The notes below the pieces were generated by a model that ran no database searches, had not been told where the DNA came from, and saw only the letters and a program-made list of their open reading frames with translations. The translations under genes and the position numbers were made by a program. A DNA stretch of 63,870 nt, filler included, from Octopus bimaculoides (taxonomy: Eukaryota), in the NCBI RefSeq assembly GCF_001194135.2. It is 4 parts of 4 records of this genome, joined end to end, with 100 filler letters (N's around TTAATTAATTAA, not from the genome) between each part and the next. Parts side by side here need not be neighbours in the genome. Positions count along the whole stretch, not along the records: positions 38,942 to 61,690 come from NC_068999.1; 3 more parts are not named here. One strand, given 5' to 3'. Shown one piece after another: positions 38,983-60,053 of this stretch; within the stretch, counting starts at the first letter, position 1; each line of letters starts with the position of its first letter.

Positions 38983-39022
38983 TTATATTTATCTATATGC
39001 ATATTTCCTCATTATCCTAAAG

Positions 39023-39120
39023 TACATTCTTCTATGTGGCATAGATTGAATGAGATTGCAGTTCAATATATTCTTGCTCCTCTTAACAGCTGCCATGGGT
39101 TGCATGAATGTGTCAAACAA
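39023..39120 (+). CDS. Candidate upstream exon of the ZNF451-like gene
   Basis: Open frame HSSMWHRLNEIAVQYILAPLNSCHGLHECVKQ ends CAA/gtaaaa in phase 0, compatible with the next exon; acceptor ambiguous (39022 or 39089); no clear motif match. Confidence 0.35.
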
Positions 39121-39542
39121 GTAAAAAACAAAAAAAAAATATGTTAAGGGTAATTTTTGTATTTATTTTCAATTTTAAATAAGTGCAAAAAATTATAATA
39201 ATTGTTTGTCTCTTGCGCAATAAAATTTACAATCTCATTATGGAAAAGTGCCTTAAAATATTCACTTTCCTTTGATGATGGCTGTAAAATTTTTGAAACA
39301 TCAATTGACGATGTCTGCCGTTTAAGAGTTAATTCAGTGTCATGTCATCTATGTGGTTATTATACTTAGATTCACCATCAGTATTTCTTTTATCTTTTTT
39401 AATCTCCTTTACACAGCACTTTGTTACCCAGTAGGTGTCATTCATTCATATATACATACTAGTTTAGACTCTTCTATAGAAACATTTCATTTATTAAATC
39501 TGTTGGATTTTAAAATTTTATTTTCTGTTTCTTGGATTTCAG

Positions 39543-39717
39543 TTTGAGCAAGCATGTTCAGAGCACCAAAGGTCTAGTAACCATAATGCCTTTATTAAAC
39601 CAGTTCCCATATCCAGTTACATATGCCAAACATGCTTACTGATATTTTCATCCAGAATTAATTGCTTGATGCACATGAGCACAACTAAACATCACTTATC
39701 TGCCTTCAGTTTCCAAA
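39543..39717 (+). CDS. ZNF451: ZNF451-like exon: C2H2 finger
   Basis: Acceptor tttcag/TTT, donor A/gtaagt (phase 0 to 1); translates FEQACSEHQRSSNHNAFIKPVPISSYICQTCLLIFSSRINCLMHMSTTKHHLSAFSFQ (C-x2-C-x12-H). Confidence 0.85.
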
Positions 39718-42700
39718 GTAAGTTATTAAAAAAAAAGTGGACTTTAAAAATTTTTTGTTTAACATTTATTACAGATTAGACTGAAGCCTGGTGCAGTCAC
39801 CTGGCTTACTAGTCTTCAGTCAAACAGTCCAACCCATGCCAGCATGGAAAGCGGACATTAAATGATGATGATGATGATTATGATCTATTACATTAAATCT
39901 TCCTATTTTAATCTTCTTGTGTGTCCATCTCTAATGTTTTTACTATACATCCATCTGTTTCCATTAAATTGTTTGTCGGTAGAAGTTGTGGGTTTTAATT
40001 CCAGATTGAGTGCTGAGTTCTCATTCTTATCTTGCAAAGTTTCGTCAATAAAAAAAANNNNNNNNNNNNNNNNNNNNNNNNNNNNNNNNNNNNNNNNNNN
40101 NNNNNNNNNNNNNNNNNNNNNNNAATCTTATCTAAGGTATTTTTATTATTCTGCTGTAAACATTTCATGTTTACTGCAACTGAAGGATGCCAGGCTAGAT
40201 GCTTGACTGAGTATTCTGCTCTGCTTTTCATTGGATTAATAGAACAAGTGCCAATATTCTTTTCTGCTCTAGGCACAAGGCCTGAAATTTTTTTGTGAGG
40301 GGGCCAGTCGATTAGATTGACCCCAGTACTCAACTGGTGCTTAATTTATCGACCCTGAAAGGTAAAGTCGACCTCGGTGGAATCTGAACTCAGAATGTAA
40401 AGACAGATGAAATACTGCTAAGCATTTTGCCCGGCGTGCTAACGTTTCTGCCAGCTCACCGCCTTAGAACAAGTGCTAATATTGATGGTAGCATGGAAGG
40501 TGGTGATGGTGAGAAACAATAACCACATCTGACTAGTTATTTAATTGCTTTTATATATAGTTGAGGTGTGTTCTGTTAAGAATGCATAAGAGTATAAATA
40601 GAGCTAGTTCACCCTTAGAATTCCTAAATAGCCGGTAGTATTCTTATGGTATGCTACCAATTCTTGTCTTAGGTATTCCTCGTGTGTGAAAAAAAAAAAA
40701 AAAGTAAAAGAGTCAAAAGGAAGAGTAAGTACAGTTAGGCATCTTTTTAATCACTACAAATGTTTCGATATATACAAATCCTTGTATATACAGGATTTAA
40801 AGTTAAATTTAAATTGAATTTTGTAACGATTTACCTGTATAAGAAGATCTATATGTATCTCCTCAGGTGATACTCAGTTGCTGTCTCCATAAGTAAATAT
40901 AGATTTCCTTGCTACAACATCCATGGCTTCTTCTTTGAAACTAACAAACACCTACGGTTTCCATTCGCTCGTTATGGGTGTGTCATCGCATTCGACATGA
41001 GTTACAATCTGCACGTTGTCTGTTTGTTTATTCAGTTTCAACATGTTATTCTGCACATGCCAAACTGTTCCATTACGCAAAATACATTCATCCATTAGCT
41101 CATACTTACACAAATACACACACACTCACATGCAGACACTTACACCCATACATGCATATATATAAAAATATATGTACATGTATTCAGATGCACACATGCA
41201 TACATATTCTCACCTACATATCAATAAACACATTCACATCTATACATAGACGCTTATACATTTATCTACTCATTTTCATATACATAGTTATAGCGTTGAA
41301 CACTCCATCATAAATACTCCTATACATACGTGAAGGTGGTAAAAAATGGGTTTAGCGAGATAGAATAATAATTATAATTTATACACTGTTCCATCTGGAA
41401 AAGGCATATTTGGCATGGTGGTTACATCTTGGAATTCTCTTATGTTTATTCACTAGATTTTCATTACTCAGTAGAATACTCAGTGCTTCCTCAAGGCAAA
41501 GGTCACATTTTCCAGATAGTGAAGTACATGGATGTGCATTTTTCTTATTTTTAACCATTGTATTTGGTATTTAATTTTTGATTCTTTCAGTCCCCAAATG
41601 AAGTCTGCCAGCGAGGTTGTGTGCTGTCTATTTATTTTTCGGAATGACGACATGTGGTTTCGATAACGGACTTTGAATTGGTTTTCAGTGGCACCTATGT
41701 ACATGTAATTATGTTGATATGTGTAGATTATGCATTTATATACTATATTTTTTTTAGCACATTGGTTCAGGAGCGGGCATGTGGATTTTCTACAGCATTT
41801 GCAGTTAATCGTATTCTTATTATTCTTATGTTTATCTGGTGGCTTTTTGATTCTGTTTCCATGATGTTCTGTTTGATTTCTAGTACCCAAGGCTTTGTTT
41901 AATCAGTAATCTATGATATCCTTGGCACTTCTGGCTTTATTTAACATTTATTCATTGATTGTTGTGCTTACAATAAGTACAGAAGTCCACAACACTAAGT
42001 TCAAAACTGTTATAACTGAGTATTGTAATTTACTAATTTTATCTAAATTGAACATCATGAAACAATGTTCAACATTGAATTGGTAGTTACATTTGACAGT
42101 CCCAACCATGTGCAAGCATGCAAAATACAGGCATCAACATAAACATAACAATATCACATACATAGTATAAAGATACCATGTATATATTGACTGGATATCA
42201 TCATTTTTAATGTCTACTTTTCAATGCTTGCATGGATGGTGTTTATTGAGACAGCTTTTCTATGACCAGATGCCCTCTCTGTCACCAACTCTCACCTGTT
42301 TCCAAGCAAGATAATATTTCCCCTATGGCCAGACAGGATTTTGCAGAATATTGTAAATGAATAAGGGGAACACTCATTTTTAACTATCACTTGATATCAA
42401 GACAAGGATTCTGCAGAAAATAAAACAGAGAGAATAAGAGCTGTGGCTTAGAAGTTTGCTTCCCAACCCCATGGTTTTGGATTCAGTTCAACTTCTGCAA
42501 TAACACTGAGCTGACGTAAGTCTTGTGAATGAATTTGGTAGATGGAAACTGAAAAGCCTATCATATACATATATATACACACACATGACAGGCTTCTTTC
42601 AATTTCCATCTACCAAATCCACTTGCAAGTCTTTGGTTGGGGTGGGTCTATAAAAGCATATAGTTGCTCAAGGTGCTACACAGTGGGTCTGAATTCAAAG

Positions 42701-43868
42701 CCATGTGGTTGGAAAGCAAATTTTTTACCACACAGCCGCAGCTATACTTATTCCTCAGTGTCAAGCTATTTTGGACCCTTACCCTTAATATTAACTTTAT
42801 AGATGGACTTCACAGAACACAGTGATCTTGGTCTGTTTGATTTATTGAAATTGCTCAATTTACCACAGTTAATTGCAAGGAAGAAGTTAGGAACCCATTG
42901 TGGACTGGATGAATTACTATGATTAGCTAGAAAACTGAGTGTAGGAAGAAGTGAATACCCAGGAAACATCATGTCATCATTGATATCACTTTTATCATGA
43001 TCTTATGCTAAGATGCACTTTGATGGTTAGAAGTAACAAGATATGACTAAAAATAGTATACATGAAAAAGAAAGCTTGTTTTCTAGTTGGTTGCTCAATT
43101 CTATGTTATTAACAATGGCATGACTTAGTTTAAAAGTATGTAGTTGACCAACTTAGATACTTCAGCTAAAAATAGAGTTTGGGTTGTATTCTGTTTCTTC
43201 TCTAAATTTTAATTTTTTTTCTTATTTAGATAACTCAGAACATGTACCAGTTCCTTTGCCAAAAGTTTTGGAAACTGACTTCAGAAGGAAATGTGATATG
43301 ATCCCTAACTACATTACATGTACCAATTGTTCAGATGTCCTCTGTGAACCAACAGCTGTAACCAACCATATCAATAACCATCACATTGTTAAATGTGTAT
43401 CTAAAAAATCACTTGTAAGCTGAAAATCATTTTCTTCTGTTTCCCTTCTTAGTTTTAAAAAAGATTTTACTTGTATTTATTGTGAATTTTTAAAATTTTT
43501 CTCTTGTTCAGATTTACCACACCATAGATTTCTCATCATTACAAATCAGTTCTGTTTTCTTTTATTCATTTATTTATTTATTTATTTATTACTTGGCATT
43601 ACTTGTAAACAATAACCATTTTTTGATAAATGTAATCATTTTTAATGCCCGCTTTTCCATGCTTGCATAGGTCAGATAAAATTTGTAGAAGCAGATTTTT
43701 TTTTCCTGTTGCCAGCCTTCACCTGCTTCCAAATAAAAGAATTTTTCCCCATGACAGAACATGTTCTCATAGAAGCTTGGAAATGGTCACCCTTTGTATG
43801 ACGGTGACACTTGTTTACAACAGTCACACAATGTCAAGACAAGGAGACATCAAACTCACACACATATG

Positions 43869-43913
<45 letters not shown>

Positions 43914-44044
43914 TCATCGTTTAACGTCCGCTTTCCATGCTAGCATGGGTTGGACGATTTGACTGAGGACTGATGAAACCAGATGGCTACACCAGGCTCC
44001 AATCTGATTTGGCAGAGTTTCTACAGCTCGATGCCCTTCCTAAC

Positions 44045-44113
<69 letters not shown>

Positions 44114-45054
44114 CATCGTTTAACGTCCTCTTCCCATGCTGGCATAGGTTGGACAGTTTGACATGAAGCTGGCTAGCAGGGAGCTGTCCAGACTCCAACT
44201 GTTCGTTGTGACATAGTTTCTACAGTTGGATGCCCTTCCTAATGCCAACCACTTAACAGTGTGCTGGGACATTTTATGTGCCACTGGCACAGATGCTTTT
44301 TAAGTGACACTGCACCTGAAAGACTTAGCTTGGCACCTCTTATCAAGTACAGCAAATCACCACATCTCCTGGTTCCTTGTCATTTCTCCAGTGAGGCCTA
44401 GCATCTGAAAATCCTTTCTCACCACTTCGTCCCACATCTTCCTTGGTCTACCCCTTCCATAGGTACCCTCCACAATTAGAGCTACACTTTGTCGTGCATG
44501 CACACTGACATTACTCATTCGGCAGAGCATGCTAGCTTCAGTTCTTTCAAGTCTTTGCAGATCCTCTGTAGTCAAAGGCCATGTTTCATTGCCACGTAAC
44601 ATAGCTGTAAGTACACAGGCATCATACAATCTACCTTTATCTCTAAAGGAGAGGAAAGGTAGTTCTTTGAATTTTGCCCAGCCTGTTCTTATCCTAGCAA
44701 CTGCACTTTCAGAACTTCTTCCACCACTGCTAACTTGGTCTCCTAGGTAACAGAAGCTATCTACTACCTCTAATGATTCCTCTGAGCATTTGAGGGAGCC
44801 TATTATCTCCATCATCATCATTTAACGTCTGCTTTCCATGCTAGCATGGGTTGGACAATTTGACTGAGGACTGGCAAGCCAGAAGGCTGCACCAGGTTCC
44901 AATCTGATCTGGCAGAGTTTCCACAGCTGGATGCCCTTCCTAACGCCAACCACTCTGAAAGTGTAGTGGGTGCTTTTACATGCCACCGGCACGAGGGCCA
45001 GTCACACGGTACTAGCAATGGCAACACTCAAAAAGGTGGCACACAAAAATCTCC

Positions 45055-45086
<32 letters not shown>

Positions 45087-48000
45087 ATGAGCTTCTTTTA
45101 GTTTCCATCTACCAAATCCACTCACAAGGCTTTGGTTAATCTTAGGCTAGAGTAAAAGATTTTTCCTCAAAATACTACTGAACCAGCAACCAGGTGGTTG
45201 GCAAGCAAGTTTCTTAACTATGGCGCCATGCTTGTGCCTAATATGAAAAAATCTTAACACAAGTGTAGTCAGACATCTTGGTTTTATCCATTGCAGATGT
45301 TGCCAACCAACAAATTATATTATTTTGAAAGATTATCATTTCTGGTTGTCTAACAGCTATTTTCATTAAAACCTCTCAGTATTATTGACACTCTTATCAG
45401 TTCCTGTAACTACTTTTTACAAAACAAAGAAGCTCTTGACTAGTTGTTTGATCTGCTAGAAATTGCTGCCAACTATCCCTCAAATTATGTATAATGTAGC
45501 CATAGATACACTCTGTCTAAATAATAGACTGGATGACCTAGACTGCAGTTCTTTCACTTTACTTGCCCATACTATCACATTGTGAAACTGAATTTGATGC
45601 TATATGGTTAAGAAGGAATCTTCTTAACAACACAACCATGCTTGTACCTATCTATAACATTTAGTTATGTTTCTGCTAACATTTACTTTAACCCTTTTGT
45701 TACTAACCCAGCCGTAGCTGGCCGAAAAATTTTTTGGTTCATAAGACTAACCCGGCCATAGCCGGCCGAGTGTACCCATTGTTATTTAAATGTATATTTG
45801 AATCCAAATCTCATTAGAACATTCGTTAAAACACCTGATTTCACTTTGCAAACAGTTGAGTTATTGTCTCCGACGTTGTTTGGCATGATATTTGAACTCA
45901 GTGAATTTTAGAAGATTTTTTCCACATTTTTTGCGGCGTTAATTTTTTCAACTTTGAAGATGGAGAGGAGTTTCATGCTATCAAGCAGTGATTCCGAATT
46001 TGAAGGCTTTTCAACAGAAGATATGGAGATATCGAAGAAAAGAATGAATGAGCTACAAAAGCACGTGGAAATGTCCTCAGACCCAACCAATAATTCTTTA
46101 TTTGTTTAAAGACTGACTCGTTTTTCTCTAAGAAATTGAAGTATTTTCTTTTAATTTCAAGTGTCAATAACTCTCTTTTGATCATTCCGTCTTATTGAAA
46201 TTAATGGAAATGATTTATCATCTCTCTCTCTCTCTCTCCCTCTGTACTTTTCCTACTAAATGTGAGTAGCCATGCAGATCTACTACAAGAACTTGCTCTG
46301 ACCTTCCCCCTTCTCACAGTTTAATCCCTTGTCCTTTAGCATGAAACTGAACCTTTACCTCCACCTCCCAGTTTTGTAGTCCTACAAGCTGCATGGTGAT
46401 TTCTATTGTGGAGGTGGCATGAAAAATAAGCGCTCAGTATGCACTGAAAAGTGGTTGATGTTAGGAAAGACATCCAGCCATAGAACCCATGCCAAAGCAG
46501 ACATTAGAGCATGACGCAGTCCTTGGACCCATCAGATCCTGTCAAACCATCCAACCCATGCCAGCATAGAACATGGACGTTAAATGATGATGATTTTACT
46601 CTATACTTTCTGCTCTATCATTACCATCAGATATAGTCCGTGATTGTGTACCTTGTATCAGATTGTGAACAATAACACTCTTTGTAACAGGTTTTTAATG
46701 ATTAGTCACTGGTCTACTGCATTTCTGAGAGTGAGAGTAACAAGATGAAATATAACTTGATCCATAACAAATATTGCATGTGATTTTGAATAGAGAACAC
46801 TTTTCTTTGGTTACTTCACTGATATTTGTATCTTTCACCGATTTGTTGAATGGTGGGGAAGGCTTTTTCAGGGTACCATGTTTAGTAATTTGGTGGTCAC
46901 TTAGGAAACTAGTTATAGATGAATGGCTTGCTAGTGCTGTACATGCTATATACAAAGTTGCAGTAAGTTAAATGAGAGTCAGCAATGATTTCAGTGACAA
47001 AATTAGAGTGAAGAAAGAGTTCATGAAGGTTCAATACTTAGTCTCCACCTATTCATCATAGTCCTGGAGACCATAGCAGGGGAGTTTAAGATTGGCTGTC
47101 CACGGGAACTCCTATTTGCTGACGATCTAGTTCTCATAGTTGAAACAATAGTAGAATTAGAAAAGAAATTTCAGGCATAGAAGCTAAACCTAGAACTTGA
47201 GGTAAACTTAGCAAAGACTAAGGTTTTAGTAAGTGGAAAAGACAAGACTCTGGTATCTTTAGGAAATATCCTTGCTCAATATGCAGAAAAGTAAGTATAA
47301 ATTTTATATGTTGTATCCAATGTAAGCAATAACCACTCAACAGGTGTAATGATCACAGATAGGTTATAAGAAAAATTAAGCTTCATATGTGACAAATGCA
47401 CTGAAGTATCATATACTAGGGCATACCAGAAACAGATTCTCTTAAATATCTGGATGGCTTACTAGCAGTCAATAGCTTTTGTTACCTAGGAAGTGTAAGT
47501 AGCAAGTTAGGTGGTTGCTCTCAACGTATGGTAGCCAAGGTAAGAATGGGTTGGAGAAAGTTCAGAGAGCTACTATCGCTGCTGGTAACATCTTTTCTCC
47601 TTAGAGTGAAGGGCAGATTGTATGACCCTTGTATTAGATCTGCAATGAGCCTTGAATGCTGAGAACTTCAGAAAACTGAAAAGAAATGAAGTTAGCATGC
47701 TGCATTAGATGTGTGATTGTAAGTGCACATGAATGACAAAGTACAAGTCTGTCAAGTGGACATGTGGTGTGTATATCTTGGAGTCTTTCAATTTCATTCC
47801 AAAAGTGGTTCTTAAGTGTAAAGAACTATCTACTGAATTACAGTTTAAGTAGCTGAGTATTTCCAAAACACTTCAACTCTTGACACAAATAATTAAGCAG
47901 AATAGGTATGACACTGCAAGTGAAGACTGAGCCCTCAAATCACAAATAAAGACATTTTAGTGGACTTATTCTGTTTTCCATCTATCCAGTTTTATTTACA

Positions 48001-51000
48001 AATCTTGAGTCAACAGAAAGCTATGACAGATGGAATCAAACTTGGAAACTGTTGATTTTAAAATGTGCTTCTTAACCACTTGACCATGTTCTTTTAATTT
48101 TAACCTTGGCAACTCTTAATTTTCATTAGTATTGTGCAATTAATTACATTACATAACATACTCTGTAGCAGTACTTTGGTAGTAGAACATACCCACATGC
48201 TCATGAACATTTATTTTTCTTATCTTCAGATATAATTTTTTATTCAAAAATCTGTTTTTGGTTAAACCTTGGGTTTAGTCCTAAAAACATACCCTATGGC
48301 TTTTCATATTTTCATTCATGCTTCATATCTACATGTTTTGCTTTGTTTAAAATGTAAGAATATGAATTTTATTTTATTTTGCAGAAAGACATATTCTCAA
48401 ATTATCTAGGAGATATAACCTGTTCTAGTTGCCAGCAAATATTCCATAAAAGTACCAATAGAATTATTGGCATGAAACATCAGTGTACTTTCGATAAAAG
48501 TGGTATTCTTTTGAAAAACAATTGCAAATCTTTTCGAGAATTTGTTTTGCGAAGCAGTTTAAGTTTACATTTTCTAAATTTGCTCATTACATCTGCTGAT
48601 TTAGTATTACAGAACCCCAAGGCCAATTGCCACCACAACAATTTAAAAACAAATTTGAAAGTACCTTCAAAACGACGCAGAGTTAAAGCCTCTGTGAGTT
48701 TGAGTAATTTTACCTGCAACAATAAATCATCAACACAATTTCCATTTAGTTCAAAACAGTTTAACCCACCAACTATTTGGAGTACTCAGGATCTTGATTG
48801 TTACAGAGAGAAGAGCGAGTTGATAAATAAACTGACACAAATGAAACATATAATTTTCCTTGACCTGGATAACTGGACAGGCATTTTCAAACATGTTCAT
48901 CATTACTTCCCTAATGAAACTTTTCTTTGGGCATTTTATGGGGCTAAAACAAAATGGTTTCCACCAAAGAGGTTAGTTATTTTGGATTTCTTTTACAAAT
49001 GTTTTTCTTGTTTAATCCTTGGTTAGCCTCATTGAGCAAGCTTTATGTTCAAAGATGCTCCAATTGTGGCCATCCTATTTTTACATTAAGACATAGTATA
49101 TCTAGGACTGCATTATTCTTGTGTCTTTCTTTTTTTAAGATAATATTGTGTAACTTGAGTATGATTTAGCCATTATTTCTAATGGGCCAAGCAACCACAT
49201 AGAAGCTCCTAATTAGGTTGTTCTAAATTTTGTTGTTGGTATTGATGTTCTTTGTTTGTGTTCACCATTTGTAGCTATTGTCTGAAGACAAAGAACAAGA
49301 AATATTATAACTAGCATGTCAATTACATATGTAAAGAAAAACAATCAGCTGCAACAAAGAAAGGCACCCAGATAAAGCCAGAGATGAGGACTACTTTCGC
49401 AAAATGAACAATAATTTTAAAAGTTGTCTTACTCTCAAAGGGTTGTTTACCAAACAAGCTAAACAAATAGAAGGGGTTGGTTGTCCTTTAAACTTTGCAA
49501 AGTGTGGAAAACCACATACTATTTGTGAAACTCTTCTCTTACCAGCTACAAATGAAGTTTGGATACTATGAATTTCCTAGGTTAAAGTGCTGTAACAGCA
49601 TCAGTTCCTCTCGGTAATAGTACTGTAGTGGCAAGAACAGATGACATGGCAAAAGATACAGAAAGTAAATTATGTGATGCTTTAAAAAACAAATAATTTT
49701 TTTTTACAATGTAATGAGTCGACTTTATGCAACAATAAATCTTTGGTAATGGCCTACATCCATTATGTAAATTCAAATCAGAAAATTATCGAAGAACTTC
49801 TGTTTGCTGAAAAAGTGGTACTTGACAAAAAGTTCTACAATTTTTTAGGTTGTTAAAGATTTTTTTTAATGTTAAGAATATTCCTCTCACAAATATTATT
49901 GCATTTGCAACAGATGGAGCACCAGTTATGATAGGCCATTATTGTAGATTTATAGCACGTTTAAAGGACGCAGTTCCACATATATTTGTAGTTCATTGTG
50001 TTGTTCATGAGACCACTTGGCTGCAAAACATCTTAGTGGTAGACTTCATAACACATTGAATGATGTAATTAAAACAGTAAATAAAATCAAGGCCCATTCA
50101 CTAAATGACTGTACCTTTCAGAAGCTTTGCCATGATAAAGAAGAAAAATTTAAGCACCTGTTGTTTCATACTGAAGTGCAATAGTTGTTTTTGAATGAAA
50201 ACTGTTTAAAGTGTTATGAGCGGTCTAATACTGTTTTAGAATTTCTCGATTCATATGATGACATGTGTAATAAATTAAGCAATGAAAGAGTTGATGTTGC
50301 ATATCTTTCTGATATTTTCACTAAATTAAATGAGGTTAACATAACATTAAGTTACAAGGAAATATGAATTTAATTAAAGCAAAGATAAATATAAATGCAT
50401 TTATCAGCAAATTATTGAGAAAAAATTTTCTATATTTTCCAAGCCTACACATAAAAGAAAACAATGATAGCAACTTGATATTAGATACAGATATAAATTG
50501 CTATTGTTCTCATCTGCAGACACTGAAAGAATATTTAATGATAAGGTTTAAAGATTTTACTGATTTTAAAGTACATGATTGGGTCTTAAATCCCTTTTTG
50601 ATGTCAACCAAGTTTACATGAAAAAATCAGCATCTTAAAAAATGATTTTGAAGCTTAATATATTTTCAACAGCTTGGTTAGGAATCATTCTGGCCTAAAA
50701 TGCAAAGCAAGTATACTCAAATTTGGCAAGAAATTAAATTACTGTTCATTGCTTTTCTTTCTTCATACTTAGTAGAGAAAGGATTCAGTGTGGTGTCACA
50801 ATTTCTAACTAAGCAATGAAAGAAATTAGCAATAAGTCAGAGGAGACTTACAACTTCTTTTGACTAACATTGAACCTGAAATAGAAAATTTAGCTAGCTC
50901 TCATTAGGCACAGAAAAATCATTAACTTGCAAACTTTTGTCTTTATTAATTTTTTATCATTTCACTGTTAAAAATGAATTGTAATATACAGTCCATTTTT

Positions 51001-54000
51001 TTGAATAAGATATATAACTTATCATCTATGTTAAGATAGTTTAGTCATGTATCTCACTTGCCATGTTGGTAGGTACTAGACATAACAGCTACTTAAAATG
51101 GGGCAAGCAAAAAATAGGTTAAGAACTACTGATGTAGAGGCTCAACAGCTGTTCAAAGCTAAAGTAGTTCCTGATTTGATAAGAAAGCTCAGCCTTTAAG
51201 ATTAAGTTTTAGCTATGTTATCAATATGTTGCAGCTATGAGAGATCATTACTATAACCTGCCTTTATGAATTTATGACTTTGTGCCAATGTAAAATATTA
51301 TTCTACCTTTATTGTTTTTTATATACAAACAAATCATCATCATCATTTAACGTCCGCTTTCCATGCTAGCATGAGTTGAATGATTTGACTGAGGACTGGT
51401 GAACCAGATGGCTATACCAGGCTCCAATCTGATTTGGCAGAGTTTCTACAGCTGGATGTCCTTCCTAACACCAACCACTCTGAGAGTGTAGTGGGTGCTT
51501 TTATGTGCCACTGGCACGAAGGCCAGTCAGGAGGTGCTGGCAATGGCCACGCTCGAAATGGTGTATTTTACGTGCTACCTGCACAGGAGCCAGTCCAGCG
51601 GTACTGGCAATGAACTTGCTCGAATGTCTTTTCACGTGCCACTGGCACAAGTGCCAGGGAGGCAACGTTGGTAACGATCACGCTCAAATGGTGCTATTTA
51701 CGTGCCACCAGCACGGAAGCCAGACTGCTGGTGCTCTGGCAACGATCATGCTCGGACGGTGCTCTTAGTGATTTCCTGGTACAGGTGCCATCACGATTTC
51801 GCTTTCGCTTGCCCCAACAGGTCTTCGCAAGCTGAGTTTAGTGTTCAATGAAGAGACGTTGGTATGGGTGCCAGTCTACAAATTTAGTTTGATTTCGATT
51901 TCACTTGCCTCAACAGAGCAACTAAGTGATTCACTGTTCAATCTTCCACATGTTTCATTCCATAATACAATATCTATTACATTAAAGTACTAACAACAGA
52001 TTCCTGAGTATTAAAAAAAATCTGTTACACAATAGAAAGAGGATGGTAAGGGTGCGTGTGCAAGAGAAAGATAGAGATTTGAATGAATGCTTCAGCATGC
52101 ATACAGATAACAACAAGCTGTAGGTATGAGAGAGTCGGGGATGTGTATATATGGCATACACTCAGATGATAATTAGCTGTGGGTATATAAGAAAGGGGTA
52201 AGGTATGCACATGCCATAAGTGTTTATATGTGCCAACCATATAATGATCAAGTGCTTCTCAAATTATTTTTCTTATTGAAATGGTATTTTGTCTGTTACA
52301 ACAGACAATGATCATAGGGCATGACAGCAAGAATTGAATGGAGACAGGCAGAAAAGATAGTGGGAAAGACTGGGTGAAGTCCAAAGAAAAGAAATAAGAA
52401 TTAGGAATAAAGAGAGGAGAATCAGTAATGGTGAAAAGCATTAACTTGGAAGAAAAGGAATGAAATTAATGCAAGAAATGTAGCTGGAAGGTGTCATATG
52501 AAGAATGTTGAAGCTGAAGCTAATAAGGAAAGGAATGAGAATTATTAATCAAGAAAGAAAAATGACGACAGACAATATTTTTTTTAAAAAAGCAGAATGA
52601 GGAAGCAGGCTAGAAAAGAAAACATGACCAGAGAGAATAGACAAGATTCCCTAGAATTTAATTAAAGAATTATGAAGGGAATGACAGGATGATATTACTG
52701 AGTGGGGGGGGGGTGTTATGGTCAGCACCACCACAAAATGGATTGTGGAACTTCCAAGTGTACTTCTAGTATGTTTTAAGCATAGAAATATACTTTTGTA
52801 TACTTGATTTTTTTTCTTCAATCTCTATAGAAGTGGCATTTAGGGTCTTCAAGTATGGGAGCATCTAACTTAGGTTTTAAGCAATTAGCAAGAATCCCCA
52901 TTTCTGATAAAAGCTCTGAACTACATAAGATGATTTTATTAACATCAATATTTTGTCAACATCCAATGTGTTTATTTTTATATGTTCTGAAACTGAAGTT
53001 TTGTGGGGAAATTCTTCTTCTTGAAAATGTATCAGACATTTTTTTTTTACTGAAACAAACAAAAAACATGAAACAATGTTTGTTGATATTAAATTCAAAA
53101 ATAGTAAACTATTAATGGCACTGAGAATTATGGTAGCGAACTTTAGAAGACATCTATTAAAAAAAGGTTTGCATTAATTATACGAAAATAAGCATCACTG
53201 ATAGTAAACTGTAATATTAGCAATAATACCATTAGAAGCATCAGCTATATCTTTTGCAACAACAATAACAAAAATAATAAATACAACAAAGGTGCAGGCA
53301 TGGCTTTGTGATTGAGAAGCTTGCTTCCCAACCATGTGGTTTCAGGTTCAGTCCCACTGTGCAGCACTTTGGGCATGTGTCTTCTGCTATATCCCCGGGC
53401 TTACCAAAGCCTTGTAAGTGGATTTGGTTGATGGAAATTGAAAGAAGGCTGTCGTCTGTGTATGTTTGCATGTACCCTTATCTAGACATCATGTGCTTGT
53501 TGTAAATGAGCATCATTGTTATACAAGCGAGTTTTTTTCCAGTCTTCTGTGAAAAACATGTCTAACTATGGGAAAATATTACCTTGCTTGGAAACAGGTA
53601 AGGGTTGGTGACAGGAAGGGCATATGTCCATAGAAAATCTGCCTCAACAAATTCAGACTGATTCATACAAGCATGGAAAAGTGGATGCTAACTGATGATG
53701 AACAAAGGATAACAGTGACAATAGTGTTATTCTTTTTTATTTACTTTATTAGTGTCTCTGCTTTCCATGCTGGCATGGGTTAGATGCTTTGACTGAAACT
53801 GGTAAGCTGGAGGGCTGCAGCAAGTTCCAATCAGATTGGAACCTAGTGCAGTTCTCCAGCTTACTAGTTTCAGTCAAACTGTCTAACCCATGCCAGCATC
53901 AATGTAAAAAGGAAAGTGATGGTTGATTCCACACCAGTATTAACAACAACACTGGAGCTTCTTTGGAATTTCTTGATCTCAAATATTTCTATTGTCATCA

Positions 54001-57000
54001 AAGTAGAAATTCCATGCTAGATTAATACCAAAATGGATAATAGCAGATATAAGTGTGTGTGTGTGTGTGTATGTGCATGTGTATGTTTGTGTGTCTGTGT
54101 TTGTCCCCCCAACATCAATTGACAACCGATGCTGGTGTGTTTACGTCCCCGTAACTTAGTGGTTCGGCAAAAGAGACTGATAGAATAAGCACTGGGCTTA
54201 CAAAGAATAAGTCCGGGGGTCGATATGCTTGACTAAAGGCGGTGCTCCAGCATGTCCGCAGTCGGATGCCTGAAACAAGTAAAAGAGTAAAAGAATCATG
54301 TCATTGAAATCTTGAAGGTATGAGATAATGCAAGACTAATTCAAAACTATGTGAATAAACAAGAATTACATTTGACATAGTAGTATGAATGCTAAAGGGT
54401 TAATTTCCCATGGTAGTATATCCTTTCAGTTCAACAGAAGATGTGTTACAGTATTTCTCTCTTAAGTTATTCTATTCAGTCATCATCATCATCATCATAT
54501 GTCCACTTTTCCATGTTTGCATGGGTCACATGGAATTTGTTGAGACAGATTTTCTATGGTTGGACACCCTTCTTATTGCCAATCCTTACCTGTTTCCAAG
54601 CAAGGTAATATTTTCCCATCGCTTGACATGTTTTTACAGAAGATTGGAAATGAACCAACTCATCTGTAGGATGATGGTGATCAATCACAACTATGTTTGG
54701 ACTAGGGTACACACACACACACACAAGGCATACATACATCACTGGCTTCTTTCAGTTTCTGACTACTAAATCCACTCATAAGGCATTTGTCGGTCAAGGG
54801 TTATTGTAGAAGACACTTGTTCAAGGTGCCTTACAGTGGGACCAAAGTCAAGGCTACATAGTTGGGGCAACCTTCTCAACCACACTGCCATGCCCACCCC
54901 TATATATAAATTTACCAGTGAAATGACTCATCAGTTTATCACTTAGTTAGGTTTTTATTAATAATTGCAGTTTGACACATTTTTTCCTGCTCTGCTCTCA
55001 ACCAAGAAATTTATTGATTTTATTTCAGTCAATCAAGCAATTTCATTATTTTCAAAATAAATTCTAACCTAGCTATTTTTGGTTTTCCCATGCACAAATT
55101 CTGTACATCTTTTGTTATCGTGGCACATATGTCTAATGGTGCTATCTTGCAAAATGCCATAAGCCACTTCTGGGTTCATATAAATTACTTGACCTTGGTA
55201 GGATTTAACTCAGAACTCACAATACCAGAATAAATATTGGATTCAAATTCTGGCACAAGGCCAGCAATTTCGGGGATTGAGGTAAGTCAGTTACGGTGAC
55301 CCCACTACTCAACTGGTACTTATTTTATCAACCCTGAAAGGATGAAAGGCAAACTCAACATTAGCAGATGCCAGAATAAACATTTGCAAAACATTTCATC
55401 CAGTACTCTCACAATTCAGCTAATTTACTGCCTATTAATTCACCTATTATCATTCAAACATACTTTGGTAGCAAGAAAAAAAACACCTACCAAATATATT
55501 TTTTCTTAGCTTTATAACTTCATAATTTTAATATGAACACTAAAGAGTTTTTTAAAAATTAAAGAGAATCAATATTGTTACTTATGTTTGAACAAAAATT
55601 GAAGTCAAAATTGATGGTAAGTTAGTAGTGCAGCGGTCATTATTATTACCTTTATTTGCCCATTAACATTTCTGTCTTGGCTATCTTCTGACTATGTTCT
55701 GTCTTATTTTCAGTGATGTTTATAAGAAACTAGTTCAAGATGGTTGCTTCTTTCTGAATCCTAAGAGTGGTTATACAAAACAAGCAGCTGATTTTGCTCT
55801 TGTTCTTCATGTAAGTAACTCTACTTTCAACTTGCAAATGGCTTATTTTGAAAGGTCTTGAATTGTGGCTTGGCACCAAATGAAAGTTTTAACCTACATG
55901 ATGACAGGCAGACATGGAAATTTGTTAAATCTAATGAGACATGGAAAAGAAAAACTAGCTAGTCTGAGAACACTGTACCTTCAATAGACAGCAATGAAAA
56001 AACTCCAGGAAATTAAACAACAGCAATCTGCCATCCCCTATATATCTTCATGATAGGTTTATAGCCAGGTACAAATTACTATCTGCACATGTCTAATATT
56101 TGTGCAATAAGACCCACCTTTTTGACTCTTACTTCAAAAGTGTCAACCCTGGTTTCATTACAGTCACAAAAACATGGCACACTCTTTATACTGTGATGGT
56201 GTTTTTAGCATGGTTGGCTACAACTTGTTTCATAAAATCACATTAATCATTGTGGGGGTGATGTGATGGTCTACATTTGTTCAAACTTTTCAGCAATTCC
56301 TTGTGATGATTTGAACCAACCACAATAAAAGTTATTTTTCTGTGCTATACATATAAACATGTTGACACTTCTACTTGGAGTTGCTTACCACTCCTCAGAC
56401 CACCATCAAGACACACAGCTTTTTGACATCCTCAGAGCTGCAACTAGGGAAGCAGCTATTTGTGTTTACATTGTTAGTGACTTCAATTACCCTGTCAGCT
56501 GCAAAGTGCAAGTGGTCTTGATTTAGTGGTGAATTTGTGCTGGTCACAAGTAATCCTTTCCCCCATAAGAAGTAGCAACACTTTGGATCTGCTCTTTACC
56601 ACTACCCCTGAAACGGTTATCAGTGTCACTACTAAGAAATCTTTAGGCAACTTTGACCATGCTATGATCATTGCCAATCTGTCTCTTATGGGCAGAAACA
56701 AAAACCATCACCACCTCCAAACTGCTTGCTTTGACTGGAACAAAGGAGACTGGAACTCTTACTGCACTGAGCTACAATGCCCAAACTTCCTTGAATTTTA
56801 CAATTCTGGAGATGTCAGTACTGCACTTCAGAACACCCTCAATTCGATCTGGGCCACATGTGAAGCATCCCAAAAGTGCAATTTGGGAGATGCAGCAGTC
56901 AGGAAAGAACATCATGATGTTGAACAGGAATACAGAGTATGTATAGAAGAAGGTACAATAGATCATTTAACCATCTCAAGCAGTTGACAAAAGAGGCAGT

Positions 57001-60000
57001 GCTTAAATTTGAACAACATATAGCAACCAACCCTGACAGTAAAGTGTTCTGGAAATATGGATGTTTGAAGCAGAGGCCTTATTCTTCTGTTGGCTCTCTT
57101 TGCAATCCCCACACATCAGATTACTGATGATCACAAAGAATATGCAGAACTTGCTGGCATTTTCACTGTTGAAAATCCATATGCACTATCTTCATCCCCT
57201 CTGACATCAAATTCTATAATGTCTGTGAAATATACACCTGCAATACTGTAACACCACCTCAAGAATAAGCACAACTGTGCCTCTCCTGGTTTTGGTGGTG
57301 TTACTTATCTGCTTCTAAAATGCAGCAGGTTCTTTTTTTTGCACTAGTTTTCGTTCTTCTTCCAATTCTGTTTTAATATCTGTCCCCCCAGAGCAGTAGA
57401 ATATTGCCTGTCATTCCCCTGTTCAAAAAGGGTGATTGCACATCACTTGTCAACTACCGCCCAGTCAGTCTTACTAGCTGCATTGCCAAACTGATAGTCT
57501 TGTCAGAGAAGCACTTTGGAACTTCTGGAACTCTCACAGCCTTATTTGACCCTCACAATTTGGATTTATCCTCAACTCCAGCTGCTGTGGTCAACTCATT
57601 GAGTTTCTTGAAAATATCACTCAAATCGCTGATGGTAGCTCATGGTAGCTTCCAATTCTGTGCCTCATAAACGACTTATGGCAAAACTCTGCAATGAAGT
57701 GTGAAAGATGGTCTTCATAACTGGTTGAACTCTCTTATTCTCAGTCAAAAACAGGTAGTCATAGTTTCAGGATATCATTCTTCACCCTATGAGATGATAC
57801 CTCTGGGATCTGTTCTTGGAGCCCTGTTGTTTGTTGCATATATTAATGACAAATGCCAGCTTGAAGAATGTTACAGTGTTGAAATATGCAGATGACATCA
57901 AACTGCACCTTATTTTTCATGCAATCAGACCCAGACATACTGCAGCAACAGATTGCTGACTGTGGTCAAGTGTGCCATCATGCATTTTGGGAAGAAAAAC
58001 CTAACTTTTATGTACTCCCTCAACAACACCAATCTTAAGAAGTCATGCTAGTGCACCTACTGGGTGCTTTTTGTGCTACCTGCACCATTGATGTTGGTAT
58101 GCAGCTTGCAGGACTATGAATCACTGGAGGGTGGGAGGGAAGCTTCATACTAGGTGATGAGGAGGTTAAACTATGAGAAGCAAGGTGGGCCAGAGAAGAT
58201 TCTTGTAAGTCTGCCTGGGTTATTTAATATACAGAGCTGTTGCTGTTTCAACCAAAAGCTTTTGGTCTTAATGATGATTTCCACTTAGCAGTTTCCTGAT
58301 CCCTTAAACTTATTCACTGAAAAATTAATTTAATCTTTTGATATTAATTTTTGAAAGGTCTATTTTGCTATTCTTCATCCATTGTTTTGTATCCGTTTTC
58401 TTTTCTTTTTTTTAGAAGTAGCAATTTATTCACTTTCTGAATCCTTGGCCTTTACCTGCACCTTCATCTGCTGTGTTGGTTTTTACCATTCTTTTATATT
58501 TTATGTGCTTTCCAAATTTTGTGTTCTTTTGTGTTCATTATGGAGAATCTTTTATTTTTAGCTCACTAATTATGGAAAGTTCTTTCTGTGGGCTTCAATC
58601 TGTCTATAAAGTCTTGTTTCTATGCCAATTGTTCACTGCTGCAGTTCTTGTTGGTTTTCTGTAGGGAAAAAAAATTATTTACATTCCTACTGCAGAAATG
58701 TAAATAATTTCAATTACCTCAGTGGTTTTTGAAATATTATCTCAATACAAACATTCTCTTTCAGCATTGTTGAAGGTAACCCTTTCTTTATACTGTTACA
58801 TTCCCTGATGCTGGTGCACGTTATTTTCAGTTGGTTATTACTCTGGATATCTGACTATTGTTTAGTTATCTGTATATTTTTTTATTGAGGTTTCAGATCC
58901 AGTCAATGGCTGGAATGGTTCCCTTTGTGCTTCAGCACTACCAGCATACATGACTGTATCATTTGGGATCTCCTGTACTTTGTCATCGACAGTGTAATTC
59001 TATTGATTATTGAAAGCAATAGCAAGGAAGTGGGGTGTGATGGGGTGGGGAAACTGATTGAGTTTCTATTAACAACAGGTTTTAAATCCTGACATCCAAC
59101 TGTTGTTCTACTGTGTCCATGTAACATTTGACTACAGATGGAATCAGGCAAATGTTCAATTTTTTGCAAGCTAGCTTAAGATATTTTTGGTGCTCCAGTT
59201 AATATTTTGAATTACAGGTATGGCAACATGCTTAAGTACCTGTGATGAGTAGATGTTTTATCAAAATCATCATCATATGTCTGTTTTCCATGCTGGCATA
59301 GGTTGGACAGTTTGGCAGGAGCTGGAGAACTACTTGGGCTCCATGTCTGTTTTAGCATGGCTTCTATGGCTGGATGCCCTTCCTAATGCCTTCCACTTTA
59401 CACAGTGTACTGGGTGCATTTATGCAACACATGCATGGGTGCTTTTACATGGCACTGACATGGGTGGCATGAGCATCCATAAGCCTGCAAGATTAGGAAC
59501 ACTCAGTTGAAGAGGCATGCAGGGAATATGCCTGTATGCAAAGATAACTGCATATTTACTTAACTTGATGTGTTTTCTCAAGCACAGCAAACCACTAGTT
59601 TTTAATATTATTATTCTGTTAACAATTTTTTCTTAGGAATTTATTTATTTTTATTATTATTAACAGATTAACCAGAATGGCAAGACTAGAACATCAGAGA
59701 GTTTCTAGTTCTATGCTTGATATGCTCCGCATTCAAATCCTTCTATAGCTTACTTTCATCCTTATAAAATTGATGATATAAACATTCAATTATATCCCTC
59801 TTTCAAAATTTCTATAATTATATAACTATTTAACACTAGTAATACTATTGCTATAACTCAATCTAATTAACAGGTTGGAAAGATGGACGAACGTTTACCT
59901 GTGCACATCAAATTCACAATATTGTCTGGAGACAAAGGATTTTATGAAGTTAGTCACCAGTTTGAAAATTCCAAGAGGCACATGCAAATTGTTGATCCAC

Positions 60001-60053
60001 ATCATTTTACAAAAGAGTCATACAACTCCCTTTTTCAGTTATCACAGGTTTAG
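39543..60053 (+). CDS. ZNF451: ZNF451-like zinc-finger / PIN-like domain protein, spliced CDS join(39543-39717,43230-43414,48385-48971,55714-55810,59874-60053), 5'-incomplete
   Basis: All four introns are GT..AG and phases chain 1,0,2,0 into one open frame of 408 codons ending TAG at 60051-60053. N-terminal part (YICQTCLLIFSSRINCLMHMSTTKH ... HVPVPLPK ... ITCTNCSDVLCEPTAVTNH) and C-terminal part (IIFLDLDNW, FLWAFYG, KWFPP, GCFFLNPK, AADFALVLH, FTILSGDKGF, VDPHH) follow the order of motifs I recall from vertebrate ZNF451 (FACPNCFLLFSRKEECSKHM; VFVDFDNW, FIWGFQG, GCFFLHP, AADFAICMH, FTILSGDQGF, LNPHH). Confidence 0.9.
41400..41900 (-). mobile_element. Penelope-like element GIY-YIG endonuclease remnant (intronic)
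   Basis: NCKCCRKSTCPLLNQCAKKNIVYKC..YIGATENQFKVRYRNHMSSFR..LADFIWGLKE..QIQW..KCDLCLEE. Confidence 0.88.
43230..43414 (+). CDS. ZNF451: ZNF451-like exon: C2H2 finger
   Basis: Acceptor ttttcttatttag/AT, donor CTT/gtaagc (phase 1 to 0); NSEHVPVPLPKVLETDFRRKCDMIPNYITCTNCSDVLCEPTAVTNHINNHHIVKCVSKKSL (C-x2-C-x12-H-x3/4-H). Confidence 0.88.
44357..44800 (-). mobile_element. RTE-type LINE C-terminal fragment
   Basis: LEVVDSFCYLGDQV, ARIRTGWAKFKEL, KGRLYDACV, ETWPLT, RGRPRKMWDEVVRKD. Confidence 0.88.
45692..46110 (+). mobile_element. piggyBac-like 5' end remnant
   Basis: TTAA (45688-45691) then CCC; subterminal 24-bp direct repeat actaaccc(a/g)gcc(g/a)tagc(t/c)ggccga (45702, 45746); short ORF from 45960 MERSFMLSSSDSEFEGFSTED, like an acidic transposase N-terminus. 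No matching right end seen. Confidence 0.55.
46830..47760 (+). mobile_element. RTE-like LINE RT remnant
   Basis: FRVPCLVIWWSLRKL, GSILSLHLFIIVLE, RELLFADDLVLI, NLAKTKVL, Cys-rich insert, SFCYLG, ARVRMGWRKFRELL; many stops. Confidence 0.85.
48385..48971 (+). CDS. ZNF451: ZNF451-like exon: degenerate finger, linker and start of PIN-like domain
   Basis: Acceptor ttttgcag/AAA, donor AG/gttagt (phase 0 to 2); contains CSSCQQIF, basic patch PSKRRRVK, and HIIFLDLDNWTGIFKHVHHYFPNETFLWAFYGAKTKWFPPK. Confidence 0.9.
49280..51131 (+). mobile_element. Decayed hAT (Buster/Charlie, SCAND3/ZBED8-like) transposon
   Basis: HPDK, KCGKPHTICETLLLPA, VPLGNSTV, NIPLTNIIAFATDGAPVMIG, HCVVH, LFHTEVQ*, VDVAYLSDIFTKLNEVN, LFIAFLSSYLVEKGFSVV; right TIR aggttaagaactactg followed by atgtagag (nnnTAnnn). 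Confidence 0.88.
54296..54404. mobile_element. piggyBac-type MITE end
   Basis: Ends ..gctaaagggTTAA; no partner end found. Confidence 0.4.
55714..55810 (+). CDS. ZNF451: ZNF451-like exon: PIN-like domain, middle
   Basis: Acceptor ttttcag/T, donor CAT/gtaagt; (S)DVYKKLVQDGCFFLNPKSGYTKQAADFALVLH. Confidence 0.9.
56330..58050 (+). mobile_element. CR1-type LINE ORF2 remnant (APE endonuclease + RT)
   Basis: VSDFNYP, NTLDLLFT, LGNFDH, VIPLFKKGD..NYRPVSLTSCIAKL, LGSVLGALLFVAYIND, KYADDIKL, KCAIMHFG. Confidence 0.9.
59874..60053 (+). CDS. ZNF451: ZNF451-like terminal exon: PIN-like domain end
   Basis: Acceptor aacag/GTT; VGKMDERLPVHIKFTILSGDKGFYEVSHQFENSKRHMQIVDPHHFTKESYNSLFQLSQV*. Confidence 0.9.
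   Translation, partial: VGKMDERLPVHIKFTILSGDKGFYEVSHQFENSKRHMQIVDPHHFTKESYNSLFQLSQV

What the first reader, a model, noticed from the sequence alone, without database searches (positions are those of the whole stretch)
39543..60053. Cephalopod ZNF451-like protein with a potentially active PIN-like nuclease domain
Seen: five exons splice in frame to zinc fingers plus a C-terminal domain carrying three acidic motifs, DLDN (48.87 kb), AADF (55.79 kb) and SGDKGF (59.93 kb), each on a different exon. Known: vertebrate ZNF451/ZATT is a SUMO2/3 E3 ligase acting in TOP2 cleavage-complex repair, usually presented as a vertebrate family, and its C-terminal PIN-like (NYN/LabA-type) domain has no established function. 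Those three Asp positions match the metal-binding positions of that fold; the second Asp of SGDxD is replaced by G. Inference: a zinc-finger plus PIN protein predates vertebrates and may be a nucleic-acid-directed nuclease, with SUMO ligase activity possibly added later.
Basis: partly seen in the sequence, partly recalled or inferred. Interest (0 to 1): 0.75.

Follow-up and report, generated by a model that had tools for sequence, protein, structure and literature searches.

The report
Octopus ZNF451 gene, 3' part
This is the last five coding exons of the octopus version of ZNF451/ZATT, a zinc-finger protein ending in a PIN-like domain; public octopus annotations already carry the gene, and a 2017 survey already reported the domain in invertebrates and its possible nuclease activity, so the finding is correct but ordinary.

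Summary
Five + strand exons (39543-39717, 43230-43414, 48385-48971, 55714-55810, 59874-60053) have AG/GT borders and matching phases, and give 407 aa. The assembly gap lies inside intron 1 and hides no exon.

The translation is 91% identical, without gaps, to residues 375-780 of "E3 SUMO-protein ligase ZNF451-like" of Octopus vulgaris (same 90% cluster as the O. sinensis RefSeq ZNF451). A spliced transcript from another octopod aligns in five abutting blocks that end at these borders. The C-terminus is a full-length Pfam PIN_11 match (E 3e-64). The octopus protein also matches frog ZNF451 colinearly over zinc fingers 1-5. The piece cuts off the 5' part of the gene, about 374 codons.

The acidic residues are a family-wide feature (93-98% conserved), not special to cephalopods. 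Matelska et al. 2017 already called PIN_11 Eumetazoa-specific, a minimal NYN fold and a "potential active nuclease". Whether it cleaves anything remains untested.

Octopus and other invertebrate orthologues have paired SIM-like motifs at the N-terminus. They lack the vertebrate PxRP ligase motif and the C-terminal UIM.

Verdict: a real, correctly modelled, already known gene, of low novelty.

The parts
39543..39717 (+). Coding exon (first one in the piece). Encodes aa 1-58: the C-terminal half of zinc finger 2 (39543-39584) and C2H2 zinc finger 3, YICQTCLLIFSSRINCLMHMSTTKH (39618-39692). Donor phase 1.
   Evidence: blastn block of transcript L001 ends at 39717. 91% identity to O. vulgaris ZNF451-like.
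40058..40123 (.). Assembly gap inside intron 1 (39718-43229). No coding consequence.
   Evidence: Protein and transcript alignments are continuous across the exon 1/2 junction.
43230..43414 (+). Coding exon, aa 59-120. Holds the conserved PVPLPK segment and zinc finger 4, ITCTNCSDVLCEPTAVTNHINNHH (43313-43384).
   Evidence: Aligns with frog ZNF451 finger 4 through the O. vulgaris orthologue.
48385..48971 (+). Large coding exon, aa 121-316. Holds the atypical finger 5 (C-x2-C...H-x-C, 48415-48486), a poorly conserved linker with a KRRR basic patch (48670-48681), and the start of the PIN_11 domain: helix, strand 1 with DLDN (48862-48873) and strand 2.
   Evidence: AF2 secondary structure.
55714..55810 (+). 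Coding exon, aa 316-348. Middle of PIN_11: strand 3 and the start of the helix carrying AADF (55784-55795).
59874..60053 (+). Last coding exon, aa 349-407 plus stop TAG (60051-60053). Holds strand 4, SGDKGF (59925-59942), conserved Glu373 (59946-59948), strand 5 and DPHH (59994-60005). The protein ends 19 aa after the PIN_11 match, so there is no UIM.
48838..59993 (+). Genomic span of the Pfam PIN_11 domain (aa 272-388), split over three exons.
   Evidence: E 3.3e-64, profile positions 1-118 of 118. for coordinates.

Best explanation
The locus is the 3' part (last five coding exons, 407 codons) of the octopod orthologue of ZNF451/ZATT. The piece edge cuts off the 5' part. In the 781-aa O. vulgaris orthologue that missing part holds the SIM-like N-terminus, a Lys/Ser/Pro-rich region, zinc finger 1 and half of finger 2.

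Shown: the gene model; its identity with annotated octopus ZNF451; colinear homology to vertebrate ZNF451 over fingers 1-5 and over the PIN_11 domain; purifying selection, strongest on PIN_11.

Inferred from what is known of vertebrate ZATT: the protein is recruited through SUMO-binding motifs and fingers 1-4 to SUMOylated chromatin targets such as trapped topoisomerase II.

Inferred for the PIN_11 domain: it is a minimal NYN-type fold. Asp280/Asp282/Asn283 after strand 1, Asp342 at a helix N-terminus, Ser366-Gly-Asp368 after strand 4 and Glu373 sit at the C-terminal edge of the parallel sheet. I think they most likely form a divalent-metal site for binding and possibly cutting nucleic acid. 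I put the chance that this domain is a working nuclease or phosphodiesterase at about 0.5. The other half is a metal- or nucleic-acid-binding or protein-binding module without cleavage.

The confidence given below is for the identity of the locus.
For: Gene model: canonical splice sites and phases. Five tblastn and blastn blocks end at the exon borders.

Identity: 91% gap-free identity to CAI9736551.1 'E3 SUMO-protein ligase ZNF451-like isoform X4 [Octopus vulgaris]', which clusters with XP_029648111.1 ZNF451 [O. sinensis].

Homology to vertebrate ZNF451: octopus against frog gives the PIN domain at 41% identity (2e-36) and a colinear block over fingers 1-5 (23% over 247 aa, 8e-17). Finger 1 of the octopod orthologue just passes Pfam Zf-C2H2_ZNF451_1st (27.3 bits, cutoff 27).

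PIN_11: full-length match, E 3.3e-64.

Selection: dN/dS against the related octopod transcript is 0.32 overall, 0.16 for the PIN part and 0.52 for the fingers.

Active-site residues across about 140-165 family domains: D280 98%, D282 D/E 96%, N283 96%, D342 96%, S366 95%, D368 93%, E373 82%, R383 96%, P390 99%.

Structure: the AF2 model has pLDDT 86.7 and pTM 0.84. These residues fall at strand C-termini or helix N-termini.

Fold: apart from the rank-1 hit noted under evidence against, the leading Foldseek PDB hits, and the only ones with TM about 0.5 normalised both ways, are MARF1 NYN domains (5yaa, 6fdl; prob 0.85-0.99). There is a weak PIN7 Pfam hit (E 3.4e-7).

Literature: PMC5499597. The 2026 preprint 10.64898/2026.07.14.738426 finds ZF1-4 critical and reports base-editor hits in the PIN-like domain.
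Against: Nuclease activity has never been reported for any ZNF451 or PIN_11 protein, as far as the papers I read show.

The canonical second Asp of the NYN SxDxD motif is Gly here and in 80% of the family.

The closest octopod transcript (P0001, assembled independently from two runs) has Val (GTC) in place of Asp368 (GAC), yet its PIN domain is still under purifying selection. That argues that at least that lineage does not need this carboxylate.

Foldseek E-values are weak (about 1e-2), and the rank-1 hit is an unrelated Rossmann-like protein.

I could not obtain model coordinates, so convergence of the Asp side chains was not measured.

Expression in the window's own species was not shown.
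Confidence: 0.93

Rival explanations
1. The PIN_11 domain is a pseudo-nuclease. It keeps the NYN fold but serves only as a protein- or nucleic-acid-binding module, like the p300 contact reported for human ZNF451. The conserved acidic residues then serve binding or stability, not catalysis.
For: The fourth canonical acidic position is Gly in 80% of the family. Asp368 is Val in a related octopod whose domain is still constrained. Deleting PIN+UIM has only a modest effect in Xenopus extract. Human ZNF451 interacts with p300 through the PIN-like domain (PMC5499597). No activity has been reported.
Against: Four acidic residues plus Asn and Ser are 93-98% conserved across Eumetazoa, including stand-alone PIN_11 proteins of rotifers and cnidarians. 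That pattern is the usual mark of a catalytic or metal site. By general knowledge of PIN domains, three acidic residues are enough for activity. Two of the ten most etoposide-sensitising guide RNAs in the base-editor screen fall in the PIN-like domain.
Confidence: 0.45
2. The locus is a decaying or unexpressed copy (pseudogene) of octopus ZNF451 rather than the functional gene.
For: No expression data exist for this species. The introns are full of transposon debris. Only part of the gene can be seen.
Against: The frame is open across all five exons. All eight splice signals are canonical. dN/dS is 0.32 overall and 0.16 in the PIN domain. The exon-intron structure is kept, so it is not a retrocopy. 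It is 91% identical to the annotated O. vulgaris protein with no indels.
Confidence: 0.03
3. The five open segments are a chance alignment of open frames in AT-rich DNA, not a gene.
For: None beyond the AT-rich, repeat-rich context.
Against: BLASTP E = 0.0 to an annotated protein. Pfam E 3e-64. Nucleotide-level match of 83-93% to a spliced transcript, confined to the exons.
Confidence: 0

Closest known systems
Octopus vulgaris / O. sinensis 'E3 SUMO-protein ligase ZNF451(-like)' (CAI9736551.1, XP_029648111.1; 781 aa)
   Same: Residues 375-780 are 91% identical to the window's 407 aa with no gaps. The fingers, linker, PIN_11 domain and stop position are the same.
   Different: It is from a different octopod species (9% amino-acid divergence). 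The window lacks the first ~374 codons only because the piece ends.
Vertebrate ZNF451/ZATT (frog XP_063772803.1 used here; human Q9Y4E5 in the literature)
   Same: The C-terminal PIN_11 domain is 41% identical and has the same DLDN, AADF, SGDKGF and PHH motifs. Fingers 1-5 are colinear (8e-17). The N-terminus has SIM-like pairs in the full-length octopus protein.
   Different: Octopus has 5 fingers, not 11-12. It has no C-terminal UIM. It has no PxRP/xLRP motif between the SIM-like motifs. The His and Cys positions common in the family are Asn331 and Ser334 here; if these are the residues behind the embedded zinc loop suggested in PMC5499597 (my mapping), that loop is unlikely in octopods.
NYN-type PIN-like nucleases (MARF1 NYN domain, PDB 5yaa/6fdl; Pfam NYN PF01936; bacterial PIN_7 PF18475)
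   Same: Same alpha/beta fold class. Foldseek gives prob 0.85-0.99 and TM about 0.5 to MARF1 NYN. The PIN7 hit is E 3.4e-7. Acidic residues follow strand 1, start a helix and follow strand 4.
   Different: It is a smaller ('minimized') fold. The second Asp of SxDxD is Gly. Sequence similarity is below family thresholds. No catalytic activity has been shown.
Stand-alone PIN_11 proteins (rotifers, Nematostella, Lottia; the short octopod paralogue XP-named 'ZNF451 isoform X2' of O. bimaculoides, 228 aa)
   Same: Same PIN_11 domain with the same conserved residues, 40-49% identical.
   Different: They have no zinc fingers. The octopod short paralogue is only 47% identical, so it is a separate gene.

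Membership tests
Pfam PIN_11 (PF18479), the ZNF451 PIN-like domain | Profile match above the curated gathering score over the whole domain | tested here: met
   214.8 bits against a cutoff of 26.6, E 3.3e-64, profile positions 1-118 of 118, aa 272-388.
Pfam PIN_11 (PF18479), the ZNF451 PIN-like domain | At least four conserved Asp in the predicted active site (Matelska 2017) | tested here: met
   D280, D282, D342 and D368 are present. Each is 93-98% conserved in the family, counting D or E at position 282.
ZNF451/ZATT orthologue group | Colinear homology to vertebrate ZNF451 outside the PIN domain (fingers 1-5) | tested here: met
   The O. vulgaris orthologue (91% identical to the window) against frog ZNF451: 247-aa colinear block, E 8e-17. 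Finger 1 of octopod P0001 scores 27.3 bits against a cutoff of 27 for PF23101. Finger 1 itself lies outside the piece.
ZNF451/ZATT orthologue group | N-terminal tandem SUMO-interacting motifs | tested here: inconclusive
   The N-terminus is not in the piece. Full-length octopus, Argonauta and decapodiform orthologues start with IIILDSSDSE...ILEI...IIVVSDSSDCE-type motifs. SUMO binding was not tested.
ZNF451/ZATT orthologue group | PxRP motif between the two SIMs (the catalytic element of the SUMO E3; PMC6721559) | tested here: not met
   Absent from all cephalopod and other invertebrate orthologues inspected. PLRP, PQRP, HLRP or VLRP appears only in pangolin, lamprey, frog and sturgeon sequences. 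This was judged on orthologues, not on the window.
ZNF451/ZATT orthologue group | C-terminal ubiquitin-interacting motif after the PIN-like domain | tested here: not met
   The stop codon comes 19 aa after the PIN_11 match, and those residues form the last helix of the domain. Vertebrate sequences carry the E-A-I-[KR]-R-S tail.
ZNF451/ZATT orthologue group | About 11-12 zinc fingers | tested here: not met
   About 5 fingers in the 781-aa octopus protein, of which 3.5 lie in the window.
NYN-type PIN-like nucleases | NYN/PIN alpha-beta-alpha fold | tested here: inconclusive
   The AF2 model is confident (pLDDT 86.7). MARF1 NYN domains are the only Foldseek hits with TM about 0.5 normalised both ways (prob 0.85-0.99), but E is only about 1e-2 and the top hit is unrelated. 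No PDB relative is found by sequence.
NYN-type PIN-like nucleases | Four acidic metal ligands, including both Asp of the SxDxD motif | tested here: not met
   The motif is S366-G-D368-K-G370, so the second Asp is Gly. Gly is the family consensus at 80%, with D in only 4%. Three canonical positions plus D282 and E373 are present.
NYN-type PIN-like nucleases | Side chains converge on one metal site; metal-dependent cleavage | not testable with these tools
   Model coordinates are not returned. Only the secondary-structure positions could be checked.

The most novel reading that the evidence does not exclude
The ancestral ZNF451 may have been a compact protein of SIMs, fingers 1-5 and PIN_11. In it the PIN_11 domain would be a working metal-dependent nuclease or phosphodiesterase, aimed by SUMO and the zinc fingers at protein-DNA adducts such as trapped topoisomerase II. 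The PxRP SUMO-ligase motif, fingers 6-11 and the UIM would be vertebrate additions. The octopus protein would then be a natural minimal version for testing this.
Probability: 0.2. Interest if true: 0.6.

Novelty: already known. Interest (0 to 1): 0.15.

Why it matters
For genome annotation the result is routine. It confirms a correct model for part of an octopod ZNF451 gene that RefSeq already annotates in sister species.

The one open question it touches is general to the family, not to this window: does the PIN_11 domain of ZNF451/ZATT cut nucleic acid? The octopus protein keeps only the parts shared across animals: SIM-like N-terminus, fingers 1-5 and PIN_11. That makes it a convenient compact protein for the test. 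It could also show whether SUMO E3 activity needs the vertebrate PxRP motif.

Tried and rejected
- Sequence searches of the PDB with the 407-aa protein, the PIN_11 profile and two paralogues found only chance hits (ribosomal S27e, factor IX) or nothing. No solved PIN_11 structure or sequence-detectable NYN relative is available.
- The first word-indexed protein search missed the 91%-identical O. vulgaris protein. It appeared only in the exhaustive representative search.
- P0001 (523 aa) looked at first like a short octopod form without SIMs. Its contig has an upstream open frame in another phase across an A-run, and that frame matches residues ~147-260 of the O. vulgaris protein. The 523-aa ORF is therefore probably an assembly or frameshift truncation.
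- A paper search for the run accession SRR11869387, to name that species, found nothing.
- Cappadocia 2015 (PMC4709122) is not held. The PxRP definition was taken from PMC6721559.
- Pfam scans of transposon-like ORF fragments in the introns, singly and concatenated, gave no significant hit.
- A chance-ORF origin and a retrocopy origin were both rejected.
- The convergence of the Asp side chains could not be measured, because the structure tool returns no coordinates.
Full report
**What is in the sequence.** The piece (38942-61690, 36% G+C) carries five + strand open segments.
- Each is bounded by a polypyrimidine-AG acceptor and a GTAAGT/GTTAGT donor: 39543-39717, 43230-43414, 48385-48971, 55714-55810 and 59874-60053.
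- The splice phases fit (1, 0, 2, 0). The joined CDS is 1224 nt, giving 407 aa plus TAG.

**The assembly gap.** The gap (40058-40123) lies in intron 1, 341 nt after the donor. Alignments to orthologous proteins and to a spliced transcript are continuous across the exon 1/2 junction. It therefore hides no exon and affects only the intron length.

**Is the gene model real?** Three results say yes.
- tblastn with an octopod orthologue (P0001) hits exactly these five segments and nothing else above noise. No exon for its first 116 residues exists in 38942-39542.
- P0001 is encoded on 1.8-1.9 kb intron-less contigs assembled from two sequencing runs, so these are evidently transcripts. blastn places that transcript on the window as five blocks. 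The blocks abut in the transcript and end within 0-4 nt of my exon borders, at 83-93% nucleotide identity. This is cross-species evidence for all four introns.
- dN/dS between the window and that transcript is 0.32 overall, 0.52 for the finger region and 0.16 for the PIN part. The gene is under purifying selection, strongest on the C-terminal domain.

**What is it?** The evidence points to the octopod ZNF451 orthologue.
- Pfam gives a full-length PIN_11 match (PF18479, 214.8 bits, E 3.3e-64, aa 272-388) and a sub-threshold PIN7 match.
- The exhaustive representative search returned P0059. The cluster look-up names it CAI9736551.1 'E3 SUMO-protein ligase ZNF451-like isoform X4 [Octopus vulgaris]'. 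It sits in one 90% cluster with XP_029648111.1 'E3 SUMO-protein ligase ZNF451 [Octopus sinensis]'.
- The window's 407 aa are 91% identical, with no gap, to residues 375-780 of that 781-aa protein. The window therefore holds the last five coding exons of ZNF451 from another octopod species, with about 374 codons missing beyond the piece edge.
- Argonauta hians, Haliotis rubra and Mercenaria mercenaria proteins of the same family are also already named ZNF451-like by NCBI.

**Orthology with vertebrate ZNF451/ZATT.**
- BLASTP of the octopus protein against frog ZNF451 gives two colinear blocks. One is the PIN domain (41% identity, 2e-36). The other is a 247-aa block covering fingers 1-5 (8e-17).
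- Finger 1 of the octopod orthologue just passes Pfam's ZNF451 first-finger model (27.3 bits, cutoff 27).
- Within the window lie the second half of finger 2, fingers 3 and 4 (C-x2-C-x12-H-x4/5-H) and the atypical finger 5.
- The 2026 preprint on ZATT reports that ZF1-4 are the critical part for TOP2 cleavage-complex repair. Octopus keeps fingers 1-5 and lacks fingers 6-11.
- The octopus protein stops 19 aa after the PIN_11 match, so it has no UIM. Vertebrate sequences carry one.

**The PIN-like domain.**
- I aligned 21 PIN_11 domains from cephalopods, rotifers, a limpet, cnidarians, a lizard and others. D26, N29, D88, S112, G113, P136 and H137 (domain numbering; add 254 for model numbering) are invariant.
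- Over about 140-165 domains from the representative search, conservation is: D280 98%, D282 D/E 96%, N283 96%, D342 96%, S366 95%, D368 93%, G370 80% (Asp only 4%), E373 82%, R383 96%, P390 99%, H391 87%.
They are not a cephalopod peculiarity.
- An AlphaFold2 model built on this alignment is confident (pLDDT 86.7, pTM 0.84). It shows alternating strands and helices. D280 sits at the end of strand 1, D342 at the start of a helix, S366-D368 right after strand 4, E373 in the first turn of the next helix, and P390-H391 right after strand 5. That is the location expected for a PIN/NYN active site.
- In the Foldseek search of the PDB, MARF1 NYN domains (5yaa, 6fdl) are the only hits with TM about 0.5 normalised both ways (prob 0.85-0.99). 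E-values are only about 1e-2, and the first-ranked hit is an unrelated reductase.
- No PDB entry is related by sequence.

**What was already known.**
- Matelska et al. 2017 defined PIN_11 as the C-terminal domain of bilaterian ZNF451 proteins (human residues 887-1002).
- They called it specific to Eumetazoa, related to bacterial PIN_7 and a minimized NYN variant.

**Active or not?** For activity:
- Conservation of the acidic, Asn and Ser positions is very high, also in stand-alone PIN_11 proteins.
- The PIN part has the lowest dN/dS in the gene.
- Base-editor hits fall in the PIN-like domain in the etoposide screen.

Against activity:
- No activity has been reported.
- The second Asp of SxDxD is Gly.
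- The related octopod transcript carries GTC (Val) where the window has GAC (Asp368). Both runs show this, and the rest of the domain stays constrained.

I rate active nuclease and non-catalytic module as about equally likely.

One further difference concerns the embedded zinc-binding loop that Matelska et al. suggested. The His and Cys positions common in the family (H 58%, C 61%) are Asn331 and Ser334 in octopods. If those are the ligand positions meant (my mapping, not the paper's), such a loop is unlikely here.

**SUMO ligase 'added later'?**
- The N-terminus is outside the piece.
- The full-length octopus, Argonauta and decapodiform proteins begin with paired hydrophobic runs flanked by Ser/Asp/Glu, for example MDNSIIILDSSDSEASILEI...NSIIVVSDSSDCE. 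So do hemichordate and bivalve relatives.
- The PxRP motif defines the ZNF451 class of E3 (PMC6721559). I found it only in lamprey, sturgeon, frog and mammal sequences.
- My inference is that SUMO binding is probably ancestral, while the vertebrate-type catalytic motif may be a vertebrate innovation.

**Verdict.** Novelty is low.

Noticed in passing
window 39772-39884, 43903-44048, 44102-44247, 44802-45038, 51329-51563, 53733-53802, 59256-59391, 60917-60991: At least eight copies, in both orientations, of one dispersed SINE-like repeat of about 150-230 nt (core ...TTTAACGTCCGCTTTCCATGCTAGCATGGGTTGGAC...). All lie in introns or downstream of the gene, and several abut (AT)n or (CAT)n runs. One copy lies just upstream of the assembly gap.
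   Followed up: partly
window 49850-50621 (+), intron 3: Four consecutive short ORFs in shifting frames (e.g. ...FATDGAPVMIGHYCRFIARLKDAVPHIFVVHCVVHE...) look by eye like a decayed hAT-type transposase in the sense orientation. Pfam gave no significant hit, singly or concatenated. From memory, the human ZNF451 locus neighbours a hAT-derived gene (KIAA1586). This is probably coincidence.
   Followed up: partly
window 56359-58038 (+), intron 4; and 44357-44821 (-), intron 2: Frame-shifted ORF fragments that look like LINE endonuclease/reverse-transcriptase remains (e.g. ...LVNYRPVSLTSCIAKL...). The only Pfam trace is a non-significant Exo_endo_phos_2 hit (E 0.31).
   Followed up: partly
L001 / L002 (transcripts from SRR11869387 and SRR11869381), codon aligned to window 59931-59933: The closest octopod transcript has GTC (Val) where the window has GAC (Asp368 of SGDKGF). 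Both runs give the same sequence, and the rest of the PIN domain is constrained (dN/dS 0.16). This is a natural loss of one putative metal ligand.
   Followed up: partly
L001 1-357 versus 317-1888: The 523-aa ORF of this transcript is probably truncated. An upstream frame, open to the contig start, matches residues ~147-260 of the O. vulgaris protein and changes phase at an A-run near nt 320-335. This is either an assembly frameshift or a real difference.
   Followed up: partly
P0015 (O. bimaculoides), P0032 (O. sinensis), P0042 (Argonauta hians): Octopods have a second, short gene with PIN_11 only (140-228 aa, 47-53% identical to the window's domain). NCBI also labels it ZNF451 or ZNF451-like although it has no zinc fingers. 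The name is misleading.
   Followed up: no
P0058 / P0181 (Dreissena polymorpha LOC127858457): This zebra-mussel protein has two tandem PIN_11 domains and no fingers. The first copy has altered motifs (FLALENC, SGDMRF). The second has FLDLDNY but DATDYA in place of DAADFA.
   Followed up: no
P0143 (EukProt Picozoa sp. COSAG06; also 14 metagenome contigs): A clear PIN_11 domain (VLVDLDNW...KDAADF) sits at the N-terminus of a 464-aa protein from a Picozoa single-cell assembly and from marine metagenomes. If it is not contamination, PIN_11 is not strictly limited to Eumetazoa as published.
   Followed up: no
P0116, P0117, P0138 and others (2243-3050 aa, Logan transcripts): Very long proteins of unknown taxon carry PIN_11 at the extreme C-terminus. 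These architectures are unlike ZNF451.
   Followed up: no
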